A stretch of 64,000 nt of DNA, taken from contig JANJGN010000071.1 of NCBI GenBank assembly GCA_026770705.1, positions 248,001 to 312,000 of the forward strand. Direction: 5' to 3'. Positions 24,905 to 64,000 of the stretch are shown one piece after another (positions within the stretch are counted from its first letter, which is position 1; every line of letters starts with the position of its first letter). A program made the position numbers and the translations under genes. This DNA is from Isurus oxyrinchus. Its lineage: Eukaryota. The notes under the pieces were generated by a model, which searched no databases, was not told the DNA's origin, and saw only the letters and a program-made list of their open reading frames with translations.

Positions 24905-25293
24905 CAGAAACGTGAAGCTGGGTTACAGGGTAATAGTTATGGCTCGGACCATTGTCAAATTCTATTCTGAAATAATAAGGTCCTGCATCTTCCCGTCTGA
25001 TGTTGTTTATAATCAGGGAACAGGAGAAACTTCTTTACCCAGAGAGCCATCTTTCAGGTCTCCAGACAGCCGGGTCCGATTGTGGAACCGTGGTAACTCG
25101 TGACTGTGATCCTTGGAGTGAAAGGCAATGGGAGGCCAGAATTTGTATTTCTCATTATTTAACCAGATTCCGACTTGTCGTTTGTTTTCAAAATGTGCTG
25201 GATAACTGTAGTGACACCGAATCTGTACACACGAACCTTCCTGCGCTGTCACCTCTCGTGGAGTGTCACCTTTCCACTCTTGTGACAGTCCAA
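24905..25293 (-). pseudogene. V-set exon, unit B, frameshifted by a 22-nt insertion that replaces 2 nt
   Basis: 389 nt; reads …GDLKDGSLGKEVSPVP*; the downstream half still encodes YYFRIEFDNGPSHNYYPVTQLHVS in the original frame. Confidence 0.9.
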
Positions 25294-28942: not shown

Positions 28943-29619
28943 ATCTAAAGAACATTGTACAAGTTTCACAAAATTGCATCGAATGCCTTTGTCTCACTAA
29001 CTTCAAATTTAGAACAGGAATATTTCTCGCTGTTTCTGAGCAGCAAGGCAGCTTTGATATCACACCACCCAATGGCAGGAGTGCCTAACTACAATGTGAC
29101 ATGTTTACATGGGAAGTTTCCATTATAAAGATGGGCACAATAATTCACATGATTGGAAAATCGTCACAACATGAAGTAATGTCTTTGAGCCAAGATTTTG
29201 CAGTAAAATGAGAAATTTTATGTGTAAATATCTACAGAACAGGCTGAGCATTTTAATCACTTGTGTTAATCAATGTAATTTTATTCATAACACAAATGCT
29301 TCTTACAATCTATCGCAGCATGAAAAAGGTGCAGCATTCAGAAAGCACATTCCAATCAGAGAACAGAGTTTAGCAACGTCACATTTCTGTTCATTCCTAT
29401 TCGACCATGTTGGCTGCACACAGCCAGACAATGCCGTGGTTATGATGTGTCCACACAGCAGGACTGGGGAGCACCAGGTATAAGGAAAAGTTTCAGCTTG
29501 CTGAGGAGAAGAAGGAGAATCTCTCGTTCCAGGTTTCTCTCCGTACATTAAGAAGCAGGCATGCCGATGTTTCATTGCACTCTGTCTGCTGATGGGAGTC
29601 CGCTTGGAAATTGTTGTTT

Positions 29620-33510: not shown

Positions 33511-34462
33511 GTTCAAAGTGACAGAGCAGCTCATGTTTTGAGATGTTGGTGAACTGTTAATCCTTTGTGTCCTGACCCTGTGTTGATATTTCTGCTCACA
33601 GGTGCACAGTCATTGACCAGGAGTTTCTCCTGTGGGTCAGTGGGTTTCACACCCGAACTCAGGGAGTCAGTATGTTTTAGAATTTTGTGGGGTTCAAGAC
33701 CCCATTCAGCAGATGCCTGCCCCACAGAGTAGACTGAAATTCCCCAGTGTCAGTACTGAGGGAGTGCTGCACTGTCAGTGGGTCAGTACTGAGGGAGTGC
33801 TACACTGTCAGAGGAACAGTACTGAGGGAGTGCAGCACTGTCGGAGGGTCAGTACTGAGGGAGTGCTACACTGTCAGAGGGACAGTACTGAGGGAGTGCT
33901 GCACTGTCAGAGGGACAGTATCGAGGGAGTGCTAATCTGTCGGAGAGACAGTTTTGAGGGAGTGTTGCACTGTCAGAGGGACAGTACTGAGGAATTGTTG
34001 CGCTGTTGGAGGGTCAGTACTGATGGAGTGCTGCACTGTCGGTGGGACAGTCCTCAGGGAGTGCCGCACTGTCGGAGGGTCAGTACTGAGGGAGTGTTGT
34101 ACTGTTGGAGGTTCAGTACTGAAAGTGCGCTGCACTGTCGGAGGGTCAGTACTGAGGGAGTGTTGTACTGTCAGAGGTTCAGTATTGAGTGAGTGCTGCA
34201 CTTTCAGAGGGTCAGTACTGAGGGAGTGCTGCACTGTCAGGGGGTGAGTACATTGAGATTCCTGCTCTGCTCTATCAGCCCCTTGGCTGGACATAAAAGC
34301 CGCTGTGTTAATGTTCAGAAACGGTTATTAATTGTATTCTGGTCACCATTTTCCCTCAAAGACAGATTATCTGATTGTCATCAGAATACCTTTCTATGGG
34401 ATCCTGCTGAGCGTAATCTTGACTGTTCCAGCGAATGTATAATGAAGGGTGTCCGTTCTTAC

Positions 34463-36132: not shown

Positions 36133-36498
36133 CAGAAACTTGAAGCTGGGTTACAGGGTAATAGTTATGGCTTGGACCATTGTCAAATTTTATTCTGAAA
36201 AAATAAGGTCCTGCATCTTCCCATCTGATGTTGTTTATAATCAGTGAACAGTCACCATCTTTCAGGTCTCCAGACAGCCGGGTCCGATGCCGGAACAGTG
36301 GTAACTCGTGACTGTGATCCTTGGAGTGAAAGGCTATAAAGAATCTTATCAGGACTTTGTCATTAAACCAGATTCCAATTTGTGGTTGGTTTTCCAGACA
36401 CGATGGATAACTGTAATGACATGGAATCTGTACACACGAATATTCCTGCGCTGTCACCTCTCATGGAGTGTCACCTTTCCACTCTTGTGACAGTCCAA
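36133..36498 (-). pseudogene. V-set exon, unit D, premature stop (CGA>TGA at 36461-36463)
   Basis: 366 nt; remainder open, with YFFRIKF. Confidence 0.9.
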
Positions 36499-37594: not shown

Positions 37595-37626
37595 CTTGGA
37601 GAACTGACAGGAGGAAGTAAGATCAT
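37595..37626 (-). pseudogene. Leader exon, unit D, disabled (8-nt deletion; donor GT>CT)
   Basis: aagat^catt versus aagatttcccgatcatt in paralogues; ttagcttgg versus ttaccttgg. Confidence 0.85.
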
Positions 37627-45095: not shown

Positions 45096-45634
45096 GTCAC
45101 TACTTTAGTTTGCATTCCCTCGGTACTGAGCCTGCGACAGTGCAGCATTCCCTGGGTACGGACCCTCCGACTGTGCAGTGGTCCCTTAGTCATGAGCCCC
45201 TGATAGTGCAGCAGCCCCTAAGTACTGATGCTCGAAAAGTGTAGCGCTCCCTCAGCATTGACCATCTGACAGTGCAGCACTCCTTCAGCACTGGCACACC
45301 CAGAGTGCAACACTCGCAGTACAGACCCTCCGACAGTGCAGCACTAAGTCAGTGCTGACTGTCCAACAGTGCAGCACTCCCTCAGCACTGACCCTCCGAC
45401 TGTGCAGGACTCTCAGTCCTGACACCGAGTGCCGGTCTGAATTTTGCCAAATGAATTTCGAACTGACGACCTTCTCACTCAGAGAGAGAGAGGGTTCGAA
45501 ATCCAGTGACACACAGGAGAAATTCCTGGTCAATGACTTTCCACTTTTGAGCAGAAATATCATCACAAGTCCAGAACGCCAAGGGTTAACAGCTTCAAAA
45601 AACTCAAAACACGAGCTGTTCTGTCACTTTGATC

Positions 45635-45776: not shown

Positions 45777-46225
45777 GTAAGTAATGGAACGATTGGAATT
45801 CACTTCCACGACCAACACAGTCCTTTGTTGATGTTGTGACTTTATAAAGACAAATTCCAATGATTGATGCCTTTGAAAGATTTCTACTGATATTGAGATC
45901 TGGGTGTGAGGCTCAAGTCTGTTGTACAGAACATCTTTCTAGCTCAAGGGATGAGGGAAGTGCAGGGACATGAGCTTTGGGACATCCTGAGGTGCTGAAA
46001 TACGATATAGAAATGCAAGTCCTTCATTGATTTATTTTTTTAAAGCTTTTTAACTCTCTGCAGAGCACCTATCATCCCACAGAGAACCAAATTAGTCTGT
46101 GTAGACAATGTGTAAAAGCAGTTCTGATCTCTCGAGAGCTGTCGGACAAGAGGTGAGGTCTCATTAACTCCTTTCTCTTTCACAGTTTGAGAGTCAGAAG
46201 CTAAAGGAATATCTGGGAGTGGACA

Positions 46226-46265
46226 ATGATCGGGAAATCCTACTTCCTCCTGTCACTTCTCCAAG
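46226..46265 (+). CDS. Leader exon CDS, unit E: MIGKSYFLLSLLQ
   Basis: gacaATG…CAAG|gtaat; acceptor at ~46185. Confidence 0.88.
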
Positions 46266-47299
46266 GTAATATCATCGTCAACTTGGACAGACTTATGGCT
46301 AATAGTCTTTGTAAAAGATCATTCTTATTGAGCTGTGATAGGGAACTGATTCAGCAGTGAGCCAGTGTACAAACTCACACCAAGTCCCATTCACCCATCA
46401 CCCCTGTGCTCACTGATATACACTGACTCCCTGTCTGACAGCAGAACTGCAGGACAGCAGAGACCTCAAAGGGTTTCAGGGCTGGAGGAGGTGACAGTGA
46501 TAGGGAGTGGAGAGGGAGGATGGAGGGATAAGGAATCAATGAAGAGATTTTGAAAATTGAGTCATTGCTGGACTGGGAGCCAGTGTAGGTCAGCGAGTGA
46601 CAGGGGAGCGATCGGCTGAATAGAGAAGCAGGGATAAAAACTGGGGGATGAAGTCTATCCTGATGCAAGCACTCCGATATCAATGCCCTGAAATGTTTCT
46701 CTCTTGCTGATTTTCATCAGAATTTCCCATGAAGACAACACAGAAGCTCTTAGATTAGACAGGCAGTTCAGCGTCACACTTCCTGTCCATTCTCACCATG
46801 CTAGAAAATTCGATAAGATAGCAAGATAACTGATAGAGAGAAGGGAGGCAAAGCTGTCTGTATGTAAAACTGTCAAATATTCTGAGTTATCATGATTGTT
46901 TCTGATCTGCTGCAGAGTTTATATTTCATTGAAACTTATTACTTTGCAGCTCAGAGAGAGACCATTGACTCACTGCCTGAAAGGGCGGTGGAAGCAGATT
47001 CAACAGGAACTTTCAGAAGGGGAACTGGATAAATACTTGAAGGGGAAATTTTGCAGGGTTGTGGAGGAAAGAGCAGAGGTGAGAGTGGGAATAATTGGAC
47101 AGATCTTTCAACGGCCCAGCACAGGCTCGATGGGCCAAATGTCTTCCTTCTGTTCCGGATCATTCTACAATCCGATAAATTAAGTCCCTTTTCAATAACT
47201 CTCCAGGCTCCTGCTGCAGGAATGGATCTTTCAGAAGGGCAGGGAGCAAGCGGTTTCTCATATCATGTTCATATTTATTGACAATTACATAAGTGCATG

Positions 47300-50200
47300 G
47301 AACTGTTGAATATTTGAGTCTCTAAAGTGTGGATTTAACCTTCTGGTACACCCAGATCTTGTGCTGGTTACCTTGTCTGGAGGTGTCTTTAACTGCTCAC
47401 AGTGATCTGTGGGATTGTCACCCTTGGATGTTGTTCCTGATTTCATGTGGGATCTTCTCCTCGATGGAATAGGAGCGGGAATGGATCTGATTTATCCTCA
47501 GTTCCGCCTCACCGCTGTGCCCTTGTGTGTTTGACTCCATAGGCCCTTGGTTCTGAACAAATCCTTGTCACCTCGGCTGGTGATCATGAACCTTCTGTGG
47601 GATCCTGGATGTGAACTTGTCCCAACTGTAAACTTGGCAACTGTGCACCTCCATTTTTATCATGAACATTCCTTATCTTCTCTTGTAGTTTTAAAAGTTG
47701 CCCTCTGGTTTCTGAGAGAGTAGAATGGGTAAGAATAGCGAAATTGGTCACTACTGGCCCACCAAACATGATCTCTGTCAGTGATGCAATAAGGTGAGGT
47801 GATGGTGTAGTGGTATTGTTGCTGGACGAGTAATTCAGAGACCCAGGGTAATGTCCTGAAAATATGAGTTCAAATCCTGTCATAATAGATGATGGAATTT
47901 GAATTTAATAAAAAGATGAAATTCAAAGTCTAGTGATGACCACAAAACCATTGTTGGAAATCCCACCTGGTTCACCAGTGCCCTTTAGGGAACAAAATTG
48001 CCTGGCCGACATGTGACTCCAGACTCCACGTCAATGTGGTTGACTCTTACATTAGGGATGGGTAATAAATCCTGGCCTGACCAGTGACTCCCACATCCCA
48101 TGAATGAATTTAACAAAGTTGCAGTTGTAGGTGTTGATCTCAGATGTAACATTGCAATGTGTGGATCTTGCTTGGTCTGTCTACATTTGAGAATTAGGGA
48201 TTTCACTGGTGTGAATCATTCATTCAGCTAGGCCGTTAGATCTGGGGTAATGAGGAGAAGAAGTTGTGTGATTGATATTCCAGATTATATGTACTCATGT
48301 CCCTAGGCTCACCAAATAAACTGAAAATAGTGCTTAGAATGTGTGCACCAGTAGTGCTCGGTGTGTTGTGTTATTTTTGAATAACGGGATATCTGGTAAA
48401 GCTGTCGACGATGACGATGAAGTCAGTGACATGGACATGAAAGGATTCAGATGTGAATTTGGACTAAGAATAGGCAGGAATTTCCTGTGGAATCAATGGT
48501 TCTTTGTGTTGACTTGGCTCATCCTCTTGACAAGCCTCGAACTTCCCTACAACGACTTCAAGGTCATTGTTCATACCCGGCCAGTGACTGTATCTCTTGT
48601 GAGTCTCCCTGTCTGATCTGTGCCCATGTGTGAGGGATGAAGTTGTTGAAGAATATATCATCACAAAGGTTCCGGTATGATGCGATGCCTGCCATTAAAA
48701 ATGACTCCCTGGGAGATGCCTCACTTATCCTGATGACATCAAGTTGAATCAGCCACCCTTTCAATGATATTTCCACAGTTCCTGTAGAATTTTTCACTGT
48801 TCCCTCTTGTAGCTGCTGGCATTTCTGTTGTGCTAAATGTACTGGATCAATTGACAGACTTGCATTCTCCTGCAGGTGTAATGTTGCAGCTCCCTTGAAA
48901 CTACAAATACTGTTGAAACTTTCTGCATATTTCAATGTTATGTCCATGAACTGAGTTGATGGGGTAGTTTCTGAGGTTGACCCATGTCAGGTCTGACAGA
49001 TTCCATGGATAGTCACTAGTGTGAGGTCACTGCATGCCGGTAGACTTGCAATTGCTCAGCCTTTAGTCTCCACAATGTAGAACATCTGTGACACCCAGGA
49101 GGATTGATTGTACTTGCACCCCAGGACTATGTATTCCGCACATGGAGTTGGTGAAGTGTTGTACACAGCAGTAGGTTTCCCCATGGACTTCCATGTCCTT
49201 GGATATATGTCTTTGAAAATTTGCTGGGGTGGGCTGGGGGAGGGGAATGTTGGCACTTGCCCTTGTGTCACTCTTGGCCAATAAAGGGGAGGTAGCCACT
49301 TTCTCAGGGCAGATAATTGGAATCTTGGCCAATAGTGCGGGTGATGTGACAGCATCTGTTCTCCGTGAGATCGATGGTGTAAAAGGTGTGAAATTGTTCA
49401 ACAATTGCACAAAACGTTGAGCACAAATGTTGCACAAACTCTAAGCCGGGGTTTTCCGGCCCGGTCATGGTGGGACCTGCCTTGGGAGATTGGGACAAAT
49501 ATAAATCCATTGGCTTTCGGCCGGACCGGACAATCCTGGCAGTGGGTGGGGCCAGAAAATCCTACCACTATGGGACATTTTCAGTTTATTTGATGTGCCC
49601 AGAGAGATCACTAAGGACAACAATCCACAATTTATTGACAAGCCACGACAGGATATGTGTGAGAGGTGGAATATCGATCACCGCACCTCGTCTCGCCGTG
49701 CACATCATCGCCATTTCCTGGTTTGTCAGTCACCACATGTATATGTTCCTGATGGGATAGCGGATGGTCATTCTTATTGATTGAAGGTTCCCCGTTGTGT
49801 AGGGTCTGTTTGGATCAGCGCACGGCTCTTTGCAGCTGCATCAGCCTTTGCTCTAGTGCTCTGCCGCTGTCACTGGCCCTTTCTGCCACAAGCCTTGCAG
49901 GATTGGTGGAAAGCTGGGCATTTCCTTGGTGCCTGCAGAAGGCCACACCTTCCACACGTCTCACTAGGTTTGGATGTTCTAGTGAGTGTGTCAACAATTG
50001 ATGTTGTACTGAGGACCTGTAAGCTTCGTTGACCTGCGAGGATCACTTCGTATTTATGTCCATCCTTGAGTAGCTCTTCAATGCTATAGGTTTTGGTCTT
50101 ATCTAGCAGATCTTTCTGGAAGGCTTCCATGGGAGTGGATGCGATCACCAACTCAACAACTGTGTCTGCAGGCTCTGTGTTTGAAATCACAGTGCGTACC

Positions 50201-51150
50201 CTTTTCTCTACATCGGCTGATGAAGTGGTCTATGGATTGTGTAGGCTGATGAAATGACATAAACTCTAGTTGATGAATATGGAGTTTCACCTGATTCTGA
50301 ACCTGTCTTCCAATATCGTCCATATCTATTGGGGATCCTTTCGCTCTTCTGCTGTTAATCCTGACGTGTTCAGCCTGTGTAGACCTTCATTCCCAATCAC
50401 GAGGTGAATTTTTATGGCTTGTTCGTCTGGTTCAGTCACACCTGAATCAGGAAACCAGAGCTCTGTACGCTGTTTAAACATTCTGAATTCAGATAGTCGG
50501 TCAGCTACATCCCAGTTCAAACTGGGGAATTTCATGGACATTCTGACAATATTCCTTTGACCTTCCTTCTCCTACAGGACCTGGGATGAGTGTCGCTTTA
50601 GCCCCTTTCGTGCGCTTTTCCGAAGCTCCGCCCACGAAGATGGGTTGTGGCAGGAACACACCACGGAGTAATGGAGTCTTTGTTTTTTATTCAATTTGCT
50701 GTTCAGCAATCTCGAAGCCGCCCGTTATAATCACTAACTTCTCTGGGCTGATTTTTATAATGGTTTTTGTGTGTTTGACTCTCCCTCGCTCACTATCGAT
50801 CCAGCCCACACCCGGGTCCCTCGCCTTCCCTGACTGAGCTAACCCGCTGCTGGTCCTGGCGATACACACTGTCCCACTCACTGACCTACAGGCCGTGTGC
50901 TGTAATCTCACCACGAGGGATCCGTCTGCTCCCCAGCTCATTACTTGAGCTCTTTCCCGTCACTGTGTCTTCAAAGGTTTCCTGAGCAGTCAGTACACTG
51001 CGATTTCAACCCTCTCTGATGCTGTGTCTCTGTTGTGGTCTGACCAAAGCGTCGAGGGTCGTCTCATGTCATGTAGCTCGATCTCAGGCTGTTCACCATG
51101 TCATACCTGTACTGAATCTTGCGGCCAGAATGTTTGGCCACCGCTGATCA
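47300..51150 (-). mobile_element. Decayed Gypsy-like retroelement with a nested SINE (~47795-48115) in the leader-V intron of unit E
   Basis: gag-like FRMFKQRTELWF with a degenerate CCHC knuckle; integrase zinc-finger-like WPGMNNDLE…ACQ…PSQHKEPL. Confidence 0.75.
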
Positions 51151-53994
51151 CCATGTTGTGTTTTTATAATGATATAAAGGCACCAGCCACTGATACGGAA
51201 TTGGGTAAATACATTGTGGGTTCAGTTATTTAGAATGGGGACATGAGAACAGATATACAAGGATAGAAAGCTGGGAGACACCTGCAGCCAAACTGTGTGA
51301 GCTGTGTTCTGCTCACAGGCCAAAGTGAGACTTGGACTGGATGGTGTTATCATCCCAGCTGATGTTACTACTGGGCAAGTCAGATCCCAGGGTGGAACTC
51401 AGCTTGATAGGTCCTAACTTTTATTTTTTATTTAGGAATGTGGAGTGCTGCTACTGAACAGAGTCACAGGAATCATCTGATGACCTTCTAACAAAAGAAT
51501 AAAACATTTATTAAACTAGGAAAGACAAACTATATTACATTACTCCTTCACCCAGACCTATACCTTTACAGATTCATAAGTAGAATACAAGTTACAATAA
51601 CTATCTTATACTCTCATGTTCACACTAAGTACACAGTTCATGCAAACCAATAGACGACCTGGTGTCAGGGACACCACATTCTGTAACCAAGTGATAGACC
51701 CCAATTGGAACAAATGCTATGGGTTTCAGGTCAACTGACTCCAGACACTTGTTTCACCATGAGGCAACTGGTCTTACAAAACTGTATCTTTCACATGAGA
51801 GTTTCCAATCTCTACTCACCAAGTGCTCTCTTTGGAATCTTCTCCAACATGACACTTTCACTCAGAGACCTTCCACAAGGGTCCACTTCCACGATTTCAA
51901 ACTCTCCTTCCCATGTTCCTGCCCCCTGGATCGCCACGTGCATTCAGCCTTCCTTCTACGCGTTGTCTTTCCAATGCTCAGTCATGCCAATGGAACACCA
52001 TGGCTTCACATGGTCATAGTAAGAAGACATCAACATTTGGCTGTCTCCTATGATCTTCTGGCTTCTAATCAGCCTTTTTTGCTTTAGGTCTGTGTCCTTT
52101 TGCTTTTTCTCTTTTAGCTTGGATCCCTCCTCTGCTCCTCAATCTTATCTCGACTTAACAGGACCTTTTTCAGATTCCTGATCTTCTTTGGAGTAGAAGG
52201 TCTTCTTGGCTCTTTCTCCTGTTCCACTCGATAGTTTTGGCTTCTTCTTTACTTTGGGACTGACTATCTGTCCCGCTCCTTTGCTGCTTCTCCTGGCAAC
52301 TCCTTTCAACCAAACTGAAAGCACATTTCTGTTTTTCTCTGTCTCTATGGGTCCGTCCCTCTGGATCACTGTTGCTTAGCAATAGCACAGTTTCTTACAC
52401 CTTGTGTTTGTTTTGACTTTCCTTCAAGAGACATCAAACCCCATTAGATTGCTAAACGAAAATGAAACCAAAACTGAAGTTTCCCCCTTTCTTAACACAC
52501 AAATACAGAAATCAAACTAAACTTGAACATAAACATATACCTTATCCCTAACACACACAAATACACATAGAACTTACTTAAGCTATACCCAATTCCTAAA
52601 ATCACATGACACACTTCCCCTCGAGTGATGTCATGCTGCTGTCCCTGAAAGGCATATTACAACAGTGTTATCACTTGGCAGGTGATGTGTGCCAGGCAGA
52701 CCAAGTCCATGAGAGAAAGATGGTCACATGATCATAATGATTTTGCAATTTGTATTTATTATGAGATGTGTGCACTGAATTCAGAAGCAATAATTACACC
52801 AAGACCTTTAGAGATTTGAAAATTAAATTAAAATACTTGCTCTCAAAATAAATGATTTGAAGCACATACATAACTCTACAATTACCACTATAATAATTCT
52901 TAAAATTCTGAATTAAACTGACTCCCAGTTACACTCCCTTTAAGGCAACGGTCCAAAAATAGACTTTATATTTAAAACAAACCCAGCAAGTTAACACAAT
53001 ATAAAAGCAATACCCTGCACAGAGGAATTCCAAGTGGCTTTTCCCCAACTTCAGTTCTGTTGGATAGCAGGCTTGTGCACAAATGCTAGAGGTTTCATTA
53101 AGACTATATCACACACTCGTGTTAGATCTTACATGGCATTCTGACACATAGCCTTTCATTCTCCCTGATAGATATATATTTCTCTCTTTGTAACATGAAA
53201 ATTCTATTGTTCCATATGTTTTTGAAACTGTATATTCCACATAACAAACTCTTTCGTGGTGCCCATATTGCCAGGAGCCTTTGAGAAAAATAAACACATT
53301 CCTTAGTCTTGCTTATCTGGCTAGTTGTAAACAAGCTAAGATTCCTTTGAAATCCAACAACCCCTTCATTGATAGAAAAATGCAAATTCTCTTCATACCT
53401 TCCATGCTAAGCAGCATCCATGTTTCCTCAATAGCATGTCAAGCACCTAGCTCCTTTTGATCATTTTAAACTTCCAATCTAATTAACTCCAAATGTACTT
53501 AAATCACATGCAGACCCATCATGCGTACCCCCATAAACCTACTTCACAATATACTATAAAATATTATGAAAATTATTATACTTACATCACAATAGGAACC
53601 ACTGCCTTAGACACTGAGGATCTAGGACAGCTAGGCCAATTCATGATTCATGATGGTGATAATGGGGGAATTCTGAAGGCTCCTAATCCATTGTCCTACG
53701 TTGTAAATCAGCAGTGAACTCACTTCAATTAGTGTGTCTTGTAGACACTGTGTTGGGTGGCAGACTGACTTCACTAAATAGGTACCTGAGGGTCATGAGC
53801 CAATTTAGAATGAACTTGTCCACTCCTGTGTCCGGAATTCTCTTCAATCTGTTGTGAAACCTTGGGGCATTCATTGTGTGACCTGTGGATTATCCAGACT
53901 GCAGCCTGTGTGCCCCAGTGATGGAGGGGGTGAATATTGAGTCTAGTGGATTGAGAAAACATTCAGAGTTAAATATTGATATTTCTCTCCCTAG

Positions 53995-54369
53995 TTGGAC
54001 TATCACAAGTGTGGAAAGGTTACACTCCAGGAGAGGTGACAGCGCAGGAAGGTTCGTGTGTACAGATTCCATGTAATTACAGTTATCCATCATATTTAGT
54101 AGCGAGATCACCAGTCGGAATCTGGTATATGAGAAGGAATTGGGAAAAATGGAATGAACGGTCTATAGCCTTTCACTCCAAGGATCATAATCGCGAGTTA
54201 CCACAGTTCCACCATCGGACCCAGCTGTCTGGAGACCTGAAAGATGGCGACTGTTCCCTGATTATAAACAACATCAGACGGGAAGATGCAGGATATTATT
54301 TATTCAGCCTAGAATTTGACAACAGGAATAGATACAACGACCGTCCTGAAACCCAGCTTCACGTTTCTG
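53995..54369 (+). CDS. V-set exon E1 (intact, divergent, essential Arg replaced by Ser)
   Basis: ccctag| and |gtaagt; 375 nt; …GIWYMRRNWEKWNERSIAF…EDAGYYLFSLEFDNRNRYNDRPETQLHVS. Confidence 0.9.
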
Positions 54370-54619
54370 GTAAGTGCTGTGTTATAATTACTCAACAATT
54401 CACATCCAGCACTCAATGGGAAATAATAGTGTTTGATTTGCTTGTTTTTTGGCCGTGTTAACCAGCGCCACTATTTTTAATGATTTGTCTATTTCTGCTC
54501 CCAGATCCATAAGCTTATTGTGTGTGATTGAATCCACATCATAGCTGTAACATAAACCGAGCTGAGGGGTGATGACACCTCCCCCCTGAGTGAAGTATCT
54601 CCTCCCCACTACACCTTCC

Positions 54620-56330
54620 ACCCCTCACACTGTCCGTGTAAACCCCCGTCCCATCTCCAGCCTCTCTTTCCCCTCCAAAGTCCTGCAACCTGTTTCCATC
54701 TCCCGAATCTGTTCCCATCTTTCCCGGAACTCCATGTTTGAATCCCTCCAATCAGGTTCCCACCCCAGCCACTGTGCTGAAACAGCTCTTATCAAGGTCA
54801 CAAATGGCATCCTGTGTGACTGTGACAAAGGTCAACTTTCCCTCCTCGTCCTTCTCGATCTGTCTGCAGCCTTTGACACGCTCGACCACACCATCCTCCT
54901 CCAACACCTGTCCACTGTGGTCCAGCTGGGTGGGACTGCTCTCCCCTGGCTCCATTCTTATCCATCTCATCGTAGCCAGAGAATCACTTGCAATGGCTTT
55001 GCAGCATCATCTGAACAGTGTTAGTTTTCACCTGTCCACTGAGGATCCCCAGCTCTACCTCACCACCACCTCTCTCGACTCCTCCACTGCTGCTAAATTA
55101 TCAGGCTGCTTATCCGACATCCAGTACTGGATGGGCAGAAATTCCCTCCAATTAAATATTGGAAAGACTGAAGCCATTGTCTTCATTCCCCGCTCCAAAC
55201 TCTGTTCCCTCGCTACCAACTCCATTCCTCTCCCTGGCAGCTCTCTGAGATTGAAGCCAATCTGTTCACAGCTTTGTTGTCCCATTTGATCCTGAGATGA
55301 GCTTCCGGCCTCCTATCTGCGCCCTCACTAACACCGTCTATTTCCACCTCCGTAACATCGCACGACGTCACCCTGTCTCAGCTCATCTGCTGCTGAAACC
55401 CTCATCCACGCCTTCATTACCTCCAGTCTCGACTGTTCCAACACACGCTCTACACTCCATAAACTTGAGGCCATCCAAAACTGCTGACCACGTCCTTACT
55501 CACACCAAGTCCCGTTCCCTTATCACCCGCTCTGCTCGATGACCGAGACTGGCTCCTGGTCAAGCAAAGTCTCAATGTCACAATTTTCATCTTTGTTTCC
55601 TCACTATCTCTGTAATCTCCTCGTCCTCCTCCAGTACCTACAACCATCCCATTCTCTGTAACCTCTTCAAGCCTCTACCGCTTCCCTATATCTGTAAATT
55701 CATCCTGCCCAACAAACCTACCAATCTCTGCAACCTCCTCCAGCCACTACAACCCTCCCTATTTCTGTAACTTCCTCCTGCCCCTAAAAGCTTCCGTATC
55801 TCTGTAGCCTGCTCCAGTCCCGACAACTTTCCCTGCCCCTGTAACCTGCCCCAGTCACTACAACCCTCCCTACCTCTGCAAACTCCTCCAGACCCTACAC
55901 TCTCCCAATCTCTCTTAACTTTTCCAGCCCCTACAAACCTCCCTATCGCTATAACTCCTCCAATCACTGCAAACCTCGCTATCTCTGTAACCTCCTCCAG
56001 CCCCTACAACCCTCCCTATCTCTGTAACCTCCTCCAGACCCACCAACCTTCAGAGGTCTCTGCGCTCCTCCAATTCCAGCCTCTTGACCATCCCCCGATC
56101 TCAACACTCTAACATTGGTGGCCATGCCTTCAGCTGCCTGGGGACCGAGCTCCGTAATACCCTGCCTTAAGCCCTCTCCATCCCTCACACTCACTCTCTC
56201 TCTCTCACTAACCATTTCATCCCTCTTTTAAGTTTCTCCATAACACCGATCCCTTCTGGTCAGCTGTCGCTAATATCTCCACATGTGTCTGGGTGACATA
56301 CTTTGTTTTATGACACTCCTGTGTAGCACC
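54620..56330 (+). mobile_element. L2-type LINE fragment with pyrimidine-rich tandem expansion
   Basis: ETALIKVTN.IL…LLVLLDLSAAFDTLDHTILL, LQLNIGKTEAI. Confidence 0.85.
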
Positions 56331-57773
56331 TTGGGGTGATTTGTCATGTTAAAGTTGTTGTGAAAATATAAGTTGTTGCCCTTTGACCCTCGACCCCAGA
56401 TTGAGTCTTATTTTTGAGGGAATGTACAACCTGCTTAGATTTCTGACCAAAGTGTCATTTGATTATTTTTATTGAGCGAATGCCAAGCCCCGATACCGAG
56501 CGAGAGCCTCCTCATTTGCTGAGTTTAAGGTGATGAGTCAGCCCCTTAGTCCGTACAGGGGATTCTCCTCGGTAATGTACAGCCTTGTTTGTGTCTCTCC
56601 ACAAGCGCATGAGGGATTTGTACAGAGGCTGCAGCGCTGGAGGGGGTCTGCACAGGGGTCCTGGCCTGTCCTGAGCCGGTTTTAGCAAGGACCACTCTGG
56701 CCTTGGCAGCTGAAAGCCAGCCATTGGACAGACAGGGCCTGTCACAAGGAGCCTGTTAGTCACTCCCCCCCGTGTCTCCTGTGCTCGGATCCAGACCATG
56801 TTGGCTGGTGGATCTGGCTCAGGAAGGGTCCTCCCCATGGGACCCCCAGATGGAAGGTGGGTCGAGCGGGTCAGTCACTTGCATGTTTATTCTGCAGCTT
56901 TAATATTTTAAGAAGGTAAGAATGTAGGAACATAAGAAATAGGGACAGGAGCAGGCCATTCGGCCCCTCGAGCCTGCCCTCGCTGATCTGGTTGTGGCCT
57001 TAACTCCATTTTCCTGCCTGTCCCCCAAACCCTTGACTCCCTTGTCGATCAAAAACCTGCCTCACTCAGCCTTGAGTCTATTCAATGGCCCAGCATCCAC
57101 TGCTCTCTGGGGAAGGGAATTCCACAGGCTAGCGCCCCTCTGAGAGAGGAAATTCCTCCTCATCTCAGTCTTAAATGGGAGAGTCCTCATTCCGAAACTG
57201 TGCTCCCTGGTTCTAGATTCCCCCACGAGGGGGAAACATCCTCCCAGCATCCACCCTGTCAAGCCCCCTCGGAATTGGATATGTTTCAATAAGGTCACCC
57301 CTCATTCTTCTAAACTCCAATGGATACAGGCCCAACCTGCTCAACATTTCCTCACAGGACAAACCCTTTAATCCCAGGAATCAGCCCAGTGAAGCTTCTC
57401 TGAACTGCCTGTACACAATGATCCTGTTACAATCTCACTAACGCCCTGTGCAGCTGTTGCAAGACTTCCCTCCTTTTATACTCCATCCCTTTGCAATAAA
57501 GGCCAACATTCCACTTGCCTTCCTCATTCTGTGGTGTTCCTGAATGCTGACTTTCTGTGATTCATGTACAAGGACACCCAGATCCCTCTGTACTGCATTC
57601 TGCAGCCTGTCTCCAGTTAAATAATATTCTGATTTTCTATTCTTCCTGCCAAAATAATTTGTTGCCATTCTCCTCAGTATTGACCATCCCCCCAATTCAG
57701 CCTCATCTGTAAATTTTGAGTCTAGTGGATCCACAAGCCATCCAGAGATAAATATTGAGATTTCTCTCCCCAG

Positions 57774-58142
57774 TTGGACTGTCACAAGAGTGGAAAGGTG
57801 ACACTCCACGAGAGGTGACAGCTCAGGAAGGTTCCTGTGTACAGATTCCATGTCATTACAGTTATCCATCGTGTCTGGAAAACCAACCGCGAGGTGGACT
57901 CTGGTTTAATAATGAGAAACAGATTCCCTGGGCTCCCATTGCCTTTCACTCCAAGGATCACAGTCACGAGTTACCACGGTTCCGCCATCGGACCCGGCTG
58001 TCTGGAGACCTGAAAGATGGCGACTGTTCCCTGATTATAAACAACATCAGACGGGAAGATGCAGGACCTTATTTTTTCAGAATAGAATTTGACAATGGTC
58101 CGAGACATAACTATTACCCTGTAACCCAGCTTCACGTTTCTG
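57774..58142 (+). CDS. V-set exon E2 (intact, Arg present)
   Basis: 369 nt, phase 1-1, ag/gt intact; YFFRIEFDNGPRHNYYP. Confidence 0.9.
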
Positions 58143-60055
58143 GTAAGTGCTGTGTTATAATTACTCAACAATTCACATCCAACACTCAATGGGAAATAAC
58201 ACAATCTGTGACGTTTACATATTAACACAAAACACAGGTTATTATAACACACTGTCTGATTCTCAATAACCTGGTGATAGCTTCCAGTTCAGTCCTAAAA
58301 CAACCTCTAATACTCACTTTAATATCAATAATTAAATGTGTTGACTGTGTCTATCAATGTTATCAGTTTATCCACTCCCATCAATCTCTCAAATCCTGTC
58401 TCGAAGTCTGACATATCGACAGAAGAAAGATTTACATTTCTACAGCGCCTTTCACCACCCTAGAGTTCCTACCCTAAATCTCTCCCTCTCTCTCTCTCTC
58501 TGTCTCTTTATCTCTGTCTCTCCATAACACCGACCTCTTCTGGTCAGCTGTCGCTAATATCTCCACATGTGTCTGGGTGACATACTTTGTTTTATGACGC
58601 TCCTGTGTAGCACCTTGGGGTGATTTGTCATGTTAAAGTTGTTGTGAAAATATAAGTTGTTGCCCTTTGACTCTCGACCCCAGATCGAGTCTTATTTTAG
58701 AGGGAATGTACAACCTCCTTAGATTTCTGACCAAATGTCATTTGATTATTTTTATTGAGCGAATGCCAAGCCCCGATACCGAGCGAGAGCCTCCTCATTT
58801 GCCGAGTTTAGGGTGATGAGTCAGCACCTTAGTCTGTAGAGGGGATTCTCCTCGGTAATGAGCAGCCTTGTTTGTGTCTCTCCACAAGCGCATGAGGGAT
58901 TTGTACAGAGGCTGCAGCGCTGGAGGGGGTCTGCACAGGGGTCCTGGCCTGTCCTGAGCCGGTTTTAGCAAGGACCACTCTGGCCTTGGCAGCTGAAAGC
59001 CAGCCATTGGACAGACGGGGCCTGTCACAAGGAGCCTGTTAGTCACTCCCCCCAGTGTCTCCTGTGCTCAGATCTAGACCATGTTGGCTGGTGGATCTGG
59101 CTCAGGAAGGGTCCTCCCCATGGGACCCCCAGATGGAAGGTGGGTCGAGCGGGTCATTCACTTGCATGTTTATTCTGCGGCTTTAATATTTTAAGATGGT
59201 AAGAATGTAGGAACATAAGAAACAGGGACAGGAGCAGGCCATTCGGCCCCTCGAGCATGCTCTCACTGATCTGGTTGTTGCCTTAACTCCATTTTCCTGC
59301 CTGTCCCCCAAACCCTTGACTCCCTTGTCGATCAAAAACCTGCCTCACTCAGCCTTGAGTCTATTCAATGGCCCAGCCTCCACTGCTCTCTGGGGAAGAG
59401 AATTCCACAGGCTAGCGCCCCTCTGAGAGAGGAAATTCCTCCTCATCTCAGTCTTAAATGGGAGAGCACTCATTCCAAAACTGTGCTCCCTGGTTCTAGA
59501 TTCCCCCACGAGGGGGAAACATCCTCCCAGCATCCACCCTGTCAAGCCCCCTCGGAATCGGATATGTTTCAGTAAGGTCAGCCCTCATTCTTCTAAACTC
59601 CAATGGATACAGGCCCAACCTGCTCAACATTTCCTCACAGGACAAACCCTTTAATCCCAGGAATCAGCCCAGTGTAGCTTCTCTGAACTGCCTGCACACA
59701 ATGATCCTGTTAAAATCTCACTAACGCCCTGTGCAGCTGTTGCAAGACTTCCCTCCTTTTATACTCCATCCCTTTGCAATAAAGGCCAACATTCCACTTG
59801 CCTTCCTCATTCCATGGTTTTCCTGAATGCTGACTTTCTGTGATTCATGTACAAGGACACCCAGATCCCTCTGTACTGCATTCTGCATCCTGTCTCCATT
59901 TAAATAATATTCTGATTTTCTATTCTTCCTGCCAAAATAATTTGTTGCCATTCTCCTCAGTATTGACCATCCCCCAATTCAGCCTCATCTGTAAATTTTG
60001 AGTCTAGTGGATCCACAAGCCATCCAGAGATAAATATTGAGATTTCTCTCCCCAG

Positions 60056-60424
60056 TTGGACTGTCACAAGAGTGGAAAGGTGACACTCCACGAGAGGTGA
60101 CAGCTCAGGAAGGTTCCTGTGTACAGATTCCATGTCATTACAGTTATCCATCGTGTCTGGAAAACCAACCGCGAGGTGGACTCTGGTTTAATAATGAGAA
60201 ACAGATTCCCTGGGCTCCCATTGCCTTTCACTCCAAGGATCACAGTCACGAGTTACCACGGTTCCACCATCGGATCCGGCTGTCTGGAGACCTGAAAGAT
60301 GGCGACTGTTCCCTGATTATAAACAACATCAGACGGGAAGATGCAGGACCTTATTTTTTCAGAATAGAATTTGACAATGGTCCGAGCTATAACTATTACC
60401 CTGTAACCCAGCTTCACGTTTCTG
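60056..60424 (+). CDS. V-set exon E3 (intact, Arg present)
   Basis: 369 nt, phase 1-1; differs from E2 at RFHHRIR and GPSYNYYP. Confidence 0.9.
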
Positions 60425-60891
60425 GTAAGTGCTGTGTTATAATTACTCAACAATTCACATTCAACACTCAATGGGAAATAACACAAACTGTGACGTTTAC
60501 ATATTAACACAAAACACAGCTTATTATAACACACTGTCTGATTCTCAATAACCTGATGATAGCTTCCAGTTCAGTCCTAAAGCAACCTCTAATACTTACT
60601 TTAATATCAATGATTAAATGTGTTGACTGTGTCTATCAATGTTATCAGTTTATCCACTCCCATCAATCTCTCAAATCCTGTCTTGAAGTCTGACATATCG
60701 ACAGAAGAAAGATTTACATTTCTACAGCGCCTTTCACCACCCTAGAGTTCCCACCCTAAACCTCTCCCTCTCCCTCTTCCTCTCCCTATCTCTCTCTCTC
60801 TCGCTGTGTCTCTCTGTCTCTTTCTCTCTGTCTTTCCATAACACCGACCTCTTCTGGCCAGCTGTCACTAATATCTCCACATGTGTCACAG

Positions 60892-61179
60892 ATAAACCCA
60901 CGATATTCCCTGCTGAAATTATTGCAGGAAAGCGTGTGGATGTAAGCTGCACCTTCAACACAACGTGCAATGGAACAGCAGCACCTGTCTTAACCTGGGA
61001 CACTCCCACTGACGTACCTGGATCAGTCTCAAACACTGTAACTCAGCATGGTGTCACTCTGACCTATACTTCTGTTCTGACCCTGATCCCATCACTCAAA
61101 CACCACGGACACACTCTCAGCTGCAGAGTGAGATATCCAACTGTTTCATCGGAGCGGACCCTCGTACTAACTGTGCAAG
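60892..61179 (+). CDS. C2 domain-2 exon, unit E (uses the internal cacag acceptor)
   Basis: 288 nt, phase 1-1, open frame, CAAG|gtaagt; native polypyrimidine tract replaced. Confidence 0.8.
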
Positions 61180-61502
61180 GTAAGTACATACACCTTTCAT
61201 TCTGCATCAGCACTCCCTCAGCGCTGACCCTCTGACAGTGCAGCCCGTTCTCAGTGTCCACATTCTCATGCCTCTCAAAGTGCTTCACAGTCGATAGAAG
61301 TTAACTGATCTTTATTTGATTGTTGCTGAATGAAGAGACAAGCTGTCTAAACTTTACATCTCACACACATTATTTTCCATGGCAACACCTCCTCCAATCA
61401 GAGACCACTTGCTGATTAACCAGCACTCTCTTCCCTTTAAATATAAATTGTTGTTCACTCTCTGTTGGTAAACATGCGATCTGTCTTGTTGAGTCCTGCC
61501 CT

Positions 61503-61654
61503 GATATCTGAATATCACAATGAACAGAACAAGTTCCAACAATGAGCTGTGGTTGGTGATTCCTCACGTTACATCCAGGGACACTGGAGACTATCAGTGT
61601 GCTCAGAGAATGAACATGGAGCAGTGGAGGGGTTCATAACCATCACTGTGGAAC
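61503..61654 (+). pseudogene. Broken domain-3 exon, unit E (acceptor and 5' half replaced; 1-nt deletion)
   Basis: MNRTSSNNELWLVIPHVTSRDTGDYQC then tgtgctcagag versus tgtgtggcagag in unit B; upstream intron homology stops at ~61318. Confidence 0.85.
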
Positions 61655-62061
61655 GTTAGTTAAGGCAAACTTCAACATCTCTCTCAGATTGAAACACTAC
61701 AAAAACACACATAAATACCCAGCCTTAAATAGACACCTGCAGACAAACAATCCCACATCTATGAGCACACACAAAGACACACTCACAAACAAACACACTA
61801 GCACATACTCCCCTGTGGATTACCTGACCTCCCTCAGTGCTGCACCGGAGAGTTGACCTGGATTCTGGGATTTGTGTTCCCTTTCATATTTATGGAAGAA
61901 TATGGAAATTGCAAAGTCTATTACAGACACTCAGATGCACAGAGATACTCACAGATACTCTCTGCCTCTCCAACTCTCTATCCTACTTTAAGAACCTTCC
62001 TGAAATCTAACACAGGCATCAGATGAAATTTTGTGCAATTTGTACAATGTTCTTTAGACAG

Positions 62062-62541
62062 CACAGCACTCCCTCAGTTCAAACCCTCCAACAGCGCAGC
62101 ACTCCCTCAGATCAGACCCTCCGACAGTGCAGCACTTCCTCAGTTCAAACCCTCCGACAGTGCAGCTCTCCCTCAGTTCATACCCTCCGACAGTGCAGCA
62201 CTCCCTCAGTTCAAACCCTCCGACAGTGCAGCACTCCCTCAGTTCAGAGCCTCCGAAAGTGCAGCATTCCCTCAGTTCAGACCCTCTGACAGTGCAACAC
62301 TCCCTCAGCTCAGACCCTCCGACAGTGCCGCACTACCTCAGCTCAGACCCTCCGACAGTGCAGCACTCCCTCAGTTCAGACCCTCCGACAGTGCAGCACT
62401 CCCTCAGCTCAGACCCTCCGACAGTGCAGCACTCCCTCAGCTCAGACCCTCCGACAGTGCAGCACTCCCTCAGTTCAGACCCTCCGACAGTGCAGCACTC
62501 CCTCAGTACTGAACCTCCGACAGTGCCGCACTACCTCAGTT
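62062..62541 (-). repeat. 33-bp Deu-derived minisatellite variant (ttcaga/ctcaga in place of tactga)
   Basis: 11-aa periodicity SDSAALPQFRP. Confidence 0.88.
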
Positions 62542-64000
62542 CTTCTCTGCCGATGCTGCCAGACCTGCTGAGTTTTTCCAGGTATTTCTGTTTCTGTTTC
62601 TGTTTTGAATTTCCAGCATCTGCAGTTTTTTTGCTTTTAGTGCTGGGCAGTTCCTCAGCAAGGATTCAGGCCACAAAACATTGCGAGTGCTGTGGGTCTG
62701 CGCCACGATTTAGAGAGCTGTGCTTGGCACGCCTATTCTAGTCCCAGTCCAGTGTGGTGGGGAGAGCCTGGCAGTCCTGGGTTGGTCGTGCCCAGCATGG
62801 TTTGCAGGACGTGGTCAGTCCCTCACACACGTCGGTCCTGGGGGTGGGTGGCTTGATACTAGGCCGCAGGTGGCACAATCCCAGTCAGGGGAGGCATCTG
62901 CAGCCGGTCAATGGGGAGCAGGTAATATAGAGAGTAGGGGTGGGGCTGGGAATCGAGGGGGGCCGGTGGTCTCTGTAAGTCACAGTACAATGGGCCTCTA
63001 GTTGGAGAGAGGTCAGGTCTACATGGGGCATTGGGATGTCAACATCAGACAGTCTAGGGAGGAGGACTGGGATGTCAACCCCCAACACAATAAGATCAAG
63101 GATTAGAGAGGAAGGGAGGAGACTGATTGGAAGGAGGGGAATGTGCACATTATGCTCCTCCAGCACGATGGGAGGGACTGTGATGGTTACGGGGGTGGGG
63201 GGGGTGACGTGTGAGGGGATAGACGCTTACCTGGTGGTATTGCCTCAGCCCCACCCTTTTTCAAGCTGATCCAATGTCGCAGTTGAAGAATAAGCTACAA
63301 AACAAATTGGCAGGGGAGGTCTCCCAGGGCCTGTGGGAGACATCACCCACTGCATCTTCGGCCTGTTTGAAGGGGCACCCGAACAATTCCGGCTTTTCCA
63401 AATGATGAGGAAGACACAGCTGCACCCCGAGTCCCCTACTGGGGATCCAGAAGGTTGCAATAGCGCTGCGAGGGACTCATGGGCTCCACAGTGACTCCCT
63501 AATTAGCGACTGGAAGGTTTATGTTCATTTATCTTTATTATCCGTTCATATTGAGCAATGGAGCTCCTGATTTGTCACCTTCCTGTACCTCGTCCAATGC
63601 TTCTGTTATCAGGACTTCCACATCGATGTGAAAGAGCCATGATGATAGCAGACAGTCGCACAATGGGAATGGCACTAGGCCAGTGAAGCAGAGGCCCAGG
63701 TGAATGCTTTGAAGACACGGGTTCAAATCCCACCACGGCAGCTGGAGGAATTTCAATTCGATTAATCAATAAATTTAATTGATTGATACATTTTTTTCTT
63801 ATTCATTTCAGGGATGTTGGTGTCGCTGACTAGGCCAGTATTTGTTGCCCATCCCCATTTGCCTTTGAGAACATCTGGATATCTGAGTTAGGATCAGGAG
63901 TAGGTCACTCAGCCCCTCGAACCTGCTCCGCCATTCAGTAAGATCATGGCTGATCTGATTGTCACCTCAACCTCACATTCCTGCCTACCCCCAATGACCT

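What the first reader, a model, noticed from the sequence alone, without database searches (positions are those of the whole stretch)
46226..61179. One leader, three intact tandem V exons, one D2: alternative-V or multi-V Siglec
No promoter or leader copy is visible between 46265 and 60892, yet E1, E2 and E3 all have open frames and canonical ag/gtaagt sites. The outcomes are mutually exclusive V choice (Arg-less E1 versus Arg-bearing E2/E3) or a V-V-V-C2 ectodomain, and neither is a standard Siglec layout. In a multi-V form the interdomain Cys of E1 and E2 would have no D2 partner. E2 and E3 differ by only a few exon nucleotides, and these change four residues, two in the FG/G region.
Basis: partly seen in the sequence, partly recalled or inferred. 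Interest (0 to 1): 0.85.

Follow-up and report, generated by a model that had tools for sequence, protein, structure and literature searches.

The report
Shark Siglec gene with three V-exons
A shark immune-receptor gene of the sialic-acid-lectin (Siglec) type really has one signal-peptide exon followed by three intact lectin-domain exons. Multi-domain layouts like this are already predicted in many sharks and rays, and this copy has a damaged back end, so it is a fairly ordinary family member and possibly a decaying one.

Summary
There is one leader (46226-46265), three open phase-1/phase-1 V-set exons with ag/gtaagt sites (E1, E2, E3) and one C2 exon. No second leader copy lies between them. 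E1 has Ser in place of the essential Arg.

E2 and E3 lie in a head-to-tail 2.3-kb duplication that is 96.7% identical with four indels, so two alleles assembled in tandem is unlikely.

The nearest database proteins are white shark and basking shark models reading leader-V1(E1-type)-V2(E2-type)-C2, with the V-V junction that E1>E2 splicing would give. Models with two to four adjacent V domains occur across sharks and rays. Serial inclusion (V-V-V-C2) is therefore the favoured reading. Nothing supports mutually exclusive V choice: the introns are long, the phases are symmetric, and there is no selector-type RNA pairing.

- D2's native acceptor is gone. Homology starts 6 nt before a cryptic in-frame AG, exactly at the end of the duplication.
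- The next C2 exon is a frameshifted half-remnant.
- No membrane-anchor exon lies on this strand before the window ends.

Contigs from RNA-type runs lie on the locus's unique introns. The only V>C2 junction listed among the 15 of 58 joints shown is the paralog form.

The scan found multi-V Siglec genes elsewhere in this genome before.

The parts
46226..46265 (+). Leader (signal-peptide) exon, MIGKSYFLLSLLQ, ending in phase 1, donor gtaata
   Evidence: Identical or near-identical leader copies of paralogs lie at 3833, 26225, 32915 and 37622 on the minus strand. The flanks 46006-47265 and 53624-53994 are homologous to the leader-V intron ends of the paralog at 4053-381.
53995..54369 (+). E1: V-set exon of the 'first V' type; essential Arg replaced by Ser (AGA>AGC), no Cys33
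   Evidence: It is 76.6% identical to V1 of Carcharodon P0165. It shares LVARS.VGIWYMRR and RNRYNDRPETQLH with V1 of P0171, P0165 and P0006, which keep the Arg.
57774..58142 (+). E2: V-set exon of the 'second V' type, Arg present, extra Cys33
   Evidence: 96.7% identical to V2 of Carcharodon P0172.
60056..60424 (+). E3: young duplicate of E2 (4 nt differences, 4 residue changes)
56190..58481 (.). Tandem repeat unit A (about 2.29 kb), holding E2; it starts with a CT-rich stretch plus a 92-nt element
   Evidence: Self-blast 56190-58573 against 58482-60887. MAFFT alignment: 2295 matches, 79 mismatches, 4 indels.
58482..60763 (.). Tandem repeat unit B (about 2.28 kb), holding E3
60764..60887 (.). 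Partial third copy of the unit's first 92-124 nt, abutting D2; it replaces D2's native acceptor
   Evidence: The sequence ...ctccacatgtgtc continues as tgggtgac in units A and B but as acagataaaccc here.
60892..61179 (+). D2: C2-set exon starting at a cryptic in-frame AG 9 nt inside the ancestral exon (paralogs: ttag|ATTTCACAGATAAACC)
   Evidence: Pfam C2-set_2 E 3e-9. Comparison with the paralog D2 exons at 23589 and 34759. 97.9% identical to D2 of Carcharodon P0171 and P0164.
61505..61654 (+). Remnant of the next C2-set exon (D3): 3' half only, 1-nt deletion near 61601 shifts the frame
   Evidence: tblastn with P0008 residues 400-443. Reading. Contigs of other copies carry one extra base at 61601-61603 (table 4).
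55625..56048 (.). 37-nt satellite in the E1-E2 intron, homologous to the leader-V intron satellite of the paralog at 37366-36956; no leader remnant beside it

Best explanation
This is one gene of the multi-V Siglec-like family of sharks and rays, lying at the edge of a birth-and-death cluster. A single leader serves an old 'first V' exon (E1) and a 'second V' exon. The second V exon was recently doubled (E2, E3), probably by unequal recombination between the 92-nt repeats that flank the 2.3-kb unit.

All three V exons are phase 1-1 with strong splice sites and long introns. The default outcome is therefore serial inclusion, giving V(Arg-less)-V-V-C2. The extra Cys33 of E2 and E3 may pair with the spare Cys26 of the preceding V.

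The 3' end was rearranged. D2 can be joined only through a cryptic in-frame AG, the D3 exon is dead, and no membrane exon follows within the window. Any product would be a shortened, probably secreted, form, or it would need an exon beyond 64000.

Shown here: the exon anatomy, the duplication, the lost acceptor, and the V-V(-V) layout of relatives. Inferred: the splicing pattern, the disulfide relay, and the fate of the product.
For: - Exons, phases and splice sites.
- Siglec-type V and C2 domains.
- Only one leader.
- The flanks of the leader and of E1 match the leader-V intron ends of a paralog, so E1 is the native first V.
- The nearest relatives are leader-V1(E1-type)-V2(E2-type)-C2 with junctions LLQ|VGL and HVS|VGLSQEW.
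- 2 to 4 adjacent V domains occur in models from Scyliorhinus, Mustelus, Cetorhinus, Carcharodon, Hypanus, Mobula and Hemitrygon.
- Cys33 sits in V domains that follow a V in 22/33 cases, against 2/87 first V domains. A V-V-V-C2 product has 14 Cys (even), whereas E2-C2 or E3-C2 alone would have 7.
- The E2 and E3 exons differ 3.5 times less than their flanks (4/369 against 75/2005, Fisher p 0.0066).
- Contigs of runs that contain spliced contigs, and so hold RNA, lie with 0-1 mismatches on unique intron sequence of both repeat units: table 8.
Against: - No junction 46265>53995, 54369>57774, 58142>60056 or 60424>60892 was seen. Of 58 joints, 15 were listed. The only V>C2 junction among them reads CTG|ATTTCACAG, the paralog form that this locus cannot make.
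- The Gnomon models of relatives are predictions. I could not check their RNA support.
- D2's native acceptor is lost, D3 is a remnant, and no TM exon lies on the + strand.
- E1 shows raised dN/dS against its closest paralog (1.7, not significant) and has lost the Arg.
- Two neighbouring genes are already pseudogenes.
- All 4 E2/E3 exon differences are nonsynonymous and none is synonymous. That fits gene conversion as well as it fits selection.
- Cys33 is missing from 11 of 33 downstream V domains although Cys26 is universal, so the disulfide relay is not a general rule.
Confidence: 0.5

Rival explanations
1. Decaying partial gene copy. The locus is a recent rearranged duplicate that can no longer make a membrane receptor. 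Its V exons are still open only because the damage is young or because gene conversion from working paralogs keeps refreshing them. Any RNA from it is unproductive.
For: - D2's native acceptor is replaced at the end of the tandem array.
- D3 is a half-exon with a frameshift.
- The segment that carries the activating TM exon in the paralog (31824-28992) is absent here, since 62010 continues directly into the satellite.
- No TM-like ORF was found up to 64000.
- Intron 1 is swollen to 7.7 kb.
- E1 has lost the Arg and has dN/dS 1.7 against its nearest paralog.
- Neighbouring genes have a stop in V, a broken leader, and an insertion in V.
- The only V>C2 junction contig listed belongs to a paralog whose D2 is 99.6% identical.
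Against: - About 1.44 kb of coding exons (leader, three V exons, D2) have no stop or frameshift.
- The cryptic AG keeps the frame and follows a long pyrimidine tract.
- The E2 and E3 exons are more alike than their flanks.
- E1's changes cluster in the binding-face loops while the framework is kept.
- Predicted relatives also include short forms ending soon after D2 (P0159, P0166, P0007).
- A terminal exon could lie in the 4.6 kb beyond the window.
Confidence: 0.3
2. Mutually exclusive or alternative V choice. The leader is spliced to E1, E2 or E3, and each is joined directly to D2, giving receptors with different binding heads (Arg-less or Arg-bearing).
For: All three exons have the same phase and equivalent splice sites, so every single-V product is in frame. 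The three heads differ mainly on the binding face.
Against: - There is no mechanism for exclusivity. The introns are 3404, 1913 and 467 nt, so there is no steric block.
- Symmetric phases mean double inclusion is not punished.
- No inverted repeats of 16 nt or more lie between 53600 and 60900.
- The closest relatives' models contain V1 and V2 together.
- E2-D2 or E3-D2 alone would leave an odd Cys.
Confidence: 0.08
3. Only one V exon is used (E3 next to D2, or E1 next to the leader). The others are constitutively skipped relics.
For: E3 keeps the native V-to-D2 intron flank and E1 keeps the native leader-to-V flank. Single-V relatives are the majority of the family (104 of 195 proteins).
Against: Skipped relic exons should decay, yet all three are open with consensus sites. 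The orthologous-type genes of Carcharodon and Cetorhinus are modelled with both V types.
Confidence: 0.08
4. Assembly artefact: E2 and E3 are two haplotypes of one exon laid in tandem.
For: Immune gene clusters can hold diverged haplotypes. I could not show a read or contig bridging the unit junction at 58482, because the tool skipped the CT-rich stretch.
Against: - The units differ by 3.3% substitutions plus indels of 1, 1, 8 and 32 nt. By my own estimate that is far more than ordinary within-individual allelic difference.
- The junction is a clean head-to-tail repeat with a third partial copy of the unit's start abutting D2, and there is no N gap.
- Earlier notes of this scan report the same kind of 2.3-kb V-exon repeat at other loci of this genome. 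That is an unchecked lead.
Confidence: 0.04

Closest known systems
Predicted multi-V Siglec-like proteins of lamniform sharks: Carcharodon carcharias 'Siglec-12' and 'Siglec-10, partial' (P0171, P0172, P0165, P0164); Cetorhinus maximus 'Siglec-12' isoforms XP_078389734 etc. (P0006, P0159)
   Same: - The same leader peptide.
- A first V of the E1 type (LVARS.VGIWYMRR..., RNRYNDRPETQLH) followed by a second V of the E2 type (YPSCLENQPRGG...), then the same C2 domain.
- The same exon-junction residues.
- E2 is 96.7% identical, D2 97.9% and E1 76.6%.
   Different: - These models have two V domains, not three.
- Their first V keeps the Arg (YYLFRTDF, PYFFRIEF).
- Their C2 starts DFTDKP, the native acceptor, whereas here only DKP is possible.
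- They go on to a TM exon (Arg-containing in P0171 and P0172, ITIM-type tail in P0164) that this locus lacks within the window.
Three- and four-V models in other elasmobranchs: Scyliorhinus canicula XP_038670873 (P0004), Mustelus asterias (P0158, P0161), S. torazame (P0162), Hypanus sabinus XP_059815055 (P0005), Mobula hypostoma (P0160)
   Same: Directly adjacent Siglec-type V domains ahead of one C2 domain. The downstream V domains often carry Cys33.
   Different: Their V domains are old and diverged from one another. Here two of the three are a very young duplicate pair. In rays the inner domains, not the outer one, lack the Arg.
Mammalian Siglec-12 / human Siglec-XII
   Same: More than one N-terminal V-set domain, with loss of the essential Arg in the outer V (PMC7876704).
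   Different: Siglec-12 has two V domains, is an ITIM-bearing membrane protein, and is stated to be the only mammalian Siglec with more than one V-set. There is no evidence of orthology. NCBI's name 'Siglec 12' for the shark models reflects layout only.

Membership tests
Siglec (I-type lectin) family | N-terminal V-set domain of the Siglec type | tested here: met
   Pfam V-set and Ig_CD22, E 1e-9 to 1e-13. Best solved-structure matches are Siglec-5, -7, -8, -10, CD33, MAG and sialoadhesin, E 1e-12 to 1e-15.
Siglec (I-type lectin) family | Essential Arg on strand F (YFFR.E) | tested here: met
   Present in E2 and E3 and aligned to the Siglec-5 Arg. Not met in E1, which has Ser (AGC).
Siglec (I-type lectin) family | Cys pattern: an intrasheet pair plus one spare Cys in V, and three Cys in the following C2-set domain | tested here: met
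   E1-E3 have CxxxxC...C, and E2 and E3 have an added Cys33. D2 has SC...TTC...SC. The pairing itself is inferred, not shown.
Siglec (I-type lectin) family | Membrane anchor with an ITIM/ITSM tail or a charged TM | tested here: not met
   No TM or tail exon on the + strand from 61180 to 64000, by tblastn with P0171, P0164 and P0008 and by hydropathy scan. One could lie beyond the window.
Siglec (I-type lectin) family | Binding of sialylated glycans | not testable with these tools
   Needs recombinant V domains on glycan arrays.
Multi-V Siglec (Siglec-12-like layout) | Two or more V-set exons included in one mRNA | tested here: inconclusive
   Phases and splice sites allow it and relatives are modelled so. 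No V>V junction of this locus appeared among the 15 of 58 joints listed. E1 lay outside the 6,000 letters that could be laid.
Mutually exclusive exon cassette | A mechanism that forbids joint inclusion (intron too short, frame clash, or competing RNA pairings) | tested here: not met
   The introns are 3404 and 1913 nt. All exons are phase 1-1. No inverted repeats of 16 nt or more lie in 53600-60900.

The most novel reading that the evidence does not exclude
All three V exons are spliced in series into a TM-less, secreted three-headed Siglec-like protein whose outermost head no longer binds sialic acid. Successive V domains would be tied by a Cys26-to-Cys33 disulfide relay that replaces the usual V-C2 bond. 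That would be a soluble multi-head lectin or decoy made by a very recent exon duplication.
Probability: 0.12. Interest if true: 0.6.

Novelty: new member of a known kind. Interest (0 to 1): 0.35.

Why it matters
Siglecs with more than one lectin domain are treated as a mammalian oddity (Siglec-12). I found no paper in the held library that describes them in cartilaginous fish. Even so, shark and ray annotations hold many two- to four-headed models.

This locus adds three things:
- A case where a head exon was doubled very recently, with the recombination substrate (the flanking 92-nt repeats) still visible.
- An outer head that has just lost the sialic-acid Arg through a single base change.
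- A testable idea, the Cys33 relay, for how stacked V domains could be tied together.

Its own value is limited because its 3' end is damaged and no transcript junction of the locus was seen.

Tried and rejected
- **Second leader.** blastn, tblastn and alignment of the E1-E2 intron against the leader regions show only a shared repeat-like segment and no leader remnant.
- **Short protein fragments spanning junctions.** The search for homologous proteins with E1 and with E3 each returned only the same three NCBI proteins, none from this species.
- **Read laying.**
  - All four runs were short Logan contigs that break at paralog branch points.
  - Depth could not be used.
  - Joints in 57.0-57.6 kb and 59.3-59.9 kb lie in high-copy repeat sequence and say nothing about the duplication.
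  - The junction at 58482 was skipped as low complexity, so the independent DNA check of the tandem arrangement is inconclusive.
- **Selector/docking RNA pairing.** No inverted repeats were found.
- **TM exon after D2.** None was found.
- **dN/dS for the minus-strand V at 36496.** It failed because that exon holds a stop.
- It was redone by reference.
- **Joined spliced model.** It was deliberately not built, translated or searched. All searches were exon by exon, by reference.
Full report
**What is there.** The window is a shark Siglec-like gene cluster. Its best protein matches are Carcharodon carcharias models at 92-98% identity, never 100%, so the source is probably a close relative.

On the + strand lie these exons:

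| Exon | Coordinates | Length |
|---|---|---|
| Leader | 46226-46265 | 40 nt |
| E1 (V-set) | 53995-54369 | 375 nt |
| E2 (V-set) | 57774-58142 | 369 nt |
| E3 (V-set) | 60056-60424 | 369 nt |
| D2 (C2-set) | 60892-61179 | 288 nt |

All are open and in phase 1-1, with pyrimidine-rich ag acceptors. The donors are gtaagtgc for the V exons and gtaagtac for D2.

The V exons are Siglec-type by Pfam and by solved structures. The Arg of YFFRIE in E2 and E3 aligns to the sialic-acid Arg of Siglec-5. E1 has YYLFSLEF there, with AGC where the others have AGA.

E2 and E3 differ at four nucleotides, all nonsynonymous: R70H, T73I, R110S and H111Y.

**One leader only.** The leader and its flanks have copies at 3833, 26225, 32915 and 37622, all on the minus strand and all belonging to paralogs. 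None lies between 46265 and 60892. The E1-E2 intron shares with the leader regions only a repeat-like segment and a 37-nt satellite, and has no leader remnant.

The sequence just after the leader (46266-47265) and just before E1 (53624-53994) is homologous to the two ends of the leader-V intron of the paralog at 3792-381. E1 is therefore the native first V of this leader, and intron 1 has swollen to 7.7 kb.

**The duplication.** 56190-58573 aligns head-to-tail with 58482-60887. The alignment has 2295 matches, 79 mismatches and four indels of 1, 1, 8 and 32 nt. Each unit begins with a CT-rich stretch and a 92-nt element. A third, partial copy of that start (60764-60887) abuts D2.

The layout repeat-body-repeat-body-repeat is what unequal recombination between flanking direct repeats produces. 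That step is an inference.

Divergence of 3.3% plus indels, a clean junction and no N gap make 'two alleles laid in tandem' unlikely. I could not bridge 58482 with independent reads.

The exons differ 3.5 times less than the flanks (4/369 against 75/2005, p 0.0066). With no synonymous difference among the four, gene conversion explains this as well as selection does.

- In the paralogs the C2 exon starts ttag|ATTTCACAGATAAACC. Here homology starts at TCACAG (60886), exactly where the tandem array ends, and the native acceptor is gone.
- The AG of TCACAG is in frame and follows a long pyrimidine tract.
- Downstream, 61505-61654 is only the 3' half of the next C2 exon, and a 1-nt deletion shifts its frame (contigs of other copies carry the extra base).
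- The activating-type TM exon of the closest Carcharodon relatives maps only to the minus strand (30495-30358).
- On the + strand, the segment that holds that exon in the paralog is absent, and no TM-like ORF occurs up to 64000.
- Read-through past D2 would add 18 residues and then stop.

**Relatives.** A full HMMER scan with E1 puts multi-stretch proteins on top. The named members are Gnomon models. They include Carcharodon and Cetorhinus 'Siglec-12/-13/-10' with leader-V1-V2-C2, Scyliorhinus and Mustelus with three V domains, and Hypanus and Mobula with four.

Carcharodon P0165 and P0171 and Cetorhinus P0006 have a first V of the E1 type, with the Arg kept, followed by a second V of the E2 type. 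Their junction residues LLQ|VGL and HVS|VGLSQEW are what leader>E1 and E1>E2 splicing would yield. P0171 ends in an Arg-containing TM.

So V1-V2-C2 is the ancestral layout of this gene in lamniform sharks. E3 is a new extra copy, and E1's Arg-to-Ser change is a recent single-base change.

**Cysteines.** E2 and E3 have an extra Cys33 (YPSC), whereas E1 has Tyr there.

Across 120 family V domains, Cys33 occurs in 22 of 33 domains that follow another V and in 2 of 87 first domains. Those domains are related, so this is not an independent count.

A V-V-V-C2 product has 14 Cys. E2-C2 or E3-C2 alone would have 7. This favours serial inclusion and suggests a Cys26-Cys33 relay. However, 11 downstream domains lack Cys33 while Cys26 is universal, so the relay is a hypothesis only.

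**RNA and DNA runs.** One search and one laying of 56000-61999 were allowed.

Runs X1 and X6, from the window's organism, contain spliced contigs and therefore hold RNA. The spliced contigs are a V end joined to ATTTCACAGATAAACC, and a D3-type exon end at 61654 joined to ATGCACCACAGAAT.

Their contigs lie with 0-1 mismatches on unique intron sequence of both repeat units: 56765-56913, 57365-57585, 57670-57773, 58537-58891 and 60613-60746. They also lie beyond D2 (61820-61939). This is consistent with transcription through the locus but is not proof, because DNA can be present in such runs.

The V>C2 junction seen is the paralog form. This locus cannot produce it, although the D2 in that contig is 277/278 identical to the window's D2. 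Of 58 joints, 15 were listed, and none was 58142>60056, 58142>60892 or 60424>60892. E1 and the leader lay outside the 6,000-letter limit.

**Mutually exclusive splicing.** I found no feature that would enforce it. The introns are long, the phases are symmetric, and no inverted repeats of 16 nt or more lie between 53600 and 60900.

**Verdict.**
- The anatomy is real.
- The best reading (0.5) is a member of the shark multi-V Siglec-like family. Its second V exon was recently doubled, and its V exons would by default be spliced in series.
- A serious rival (0.3) is that the copy is already decaying. This rests on its lost acceptor, dead D3, missing anchor, Arg-less and fast-evolving E1, and pseudogene neighbours (V stop at 36496-36134, broken leader at 37622).
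- Alternative V choice (0.08), single-V use (0.08) and an assembly artefact (0.04) are less likely.

**Known or new.** Mammalian Siglec-12 is described as the only Siglec with two V-sets (PMC7876704). I found no paper on multi-V Siglecs in cartilaginous fish. The layout is nonetheless recorded in automatic annotation of many species, and this scan has already reported two-V and seven-V genes elsewhere in this genome. This locus is therefore a new member of a known kind.

**Limits and compliance.**
- The joined spliced model was not built or searched. Every search was exon by exon, by reference.

Noticed in passing
window 37622-37593 and 36496-36134 (minus strand): This paralog gene is a pseudogene. 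Its leader has an 8-nt deletion and its donor has changed from AAGgtaat to AAGctaat. Its V exon carries an in-frame stop (TP*EV).
   Followed up: partly
window 32915-32874, 32277-32004 and 32000-31824 (minus strand): An intact orphan leader (MIGKSYFLLSLLQG) is followed by the usual V-upstream flank. That flank stops 10 nt into the V exon and then jumps to sequence homologous to 61829-62011. The deletion therefore removed the V exon through D2 of that copy. The relic sits in the intron between a D2 exon (34772-34452) and the Arg-containing TM exon (30495-30358).
   Followed up: partly
window 62057-62542; also 27000-28992, 33746-34245, 10190-10400, 13048-13331, 16171-16355, 45112-45423: A 33-nt satellite (GACAGTGCAGCACTCCCTCAGTTCAGACCCTCC) recurs in at least seven places in the cluster, mostly in introns of the Siglec-like genes.
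   Followed up: no
P0004-P0220, compared with window E1/E2/E3: An extra Cys at V-domain position 33 (YPSC) is almost confined to V domains preceded by another V (22/33 against 2/87). It may pair with the preceding domain's spare Cys26.
   Followed up: partly
window end and beyond (earlier notes s1-869954, s1-870051): The Siglec-like cluster ends next to hepcidin genes about 4.7 kb past the window. From my own knowledge, human HAMP lies beside MAG and CD22 on 19q13, so this may be old conserved synteny.
   Followed up: no
window 60223 (loose end of run X6): An RNA-run contig reads NNEEWRTSSI at this place. That is the CC' loop of the minus-strand V exon at 380-18, so that paralog or a close copy is probably expressed.
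   Followed up: no
window 25291-24906 (minus strand): This V exon aligns to relatives in two pieces with a frame break near 25022-25046.
   Followed up: partly
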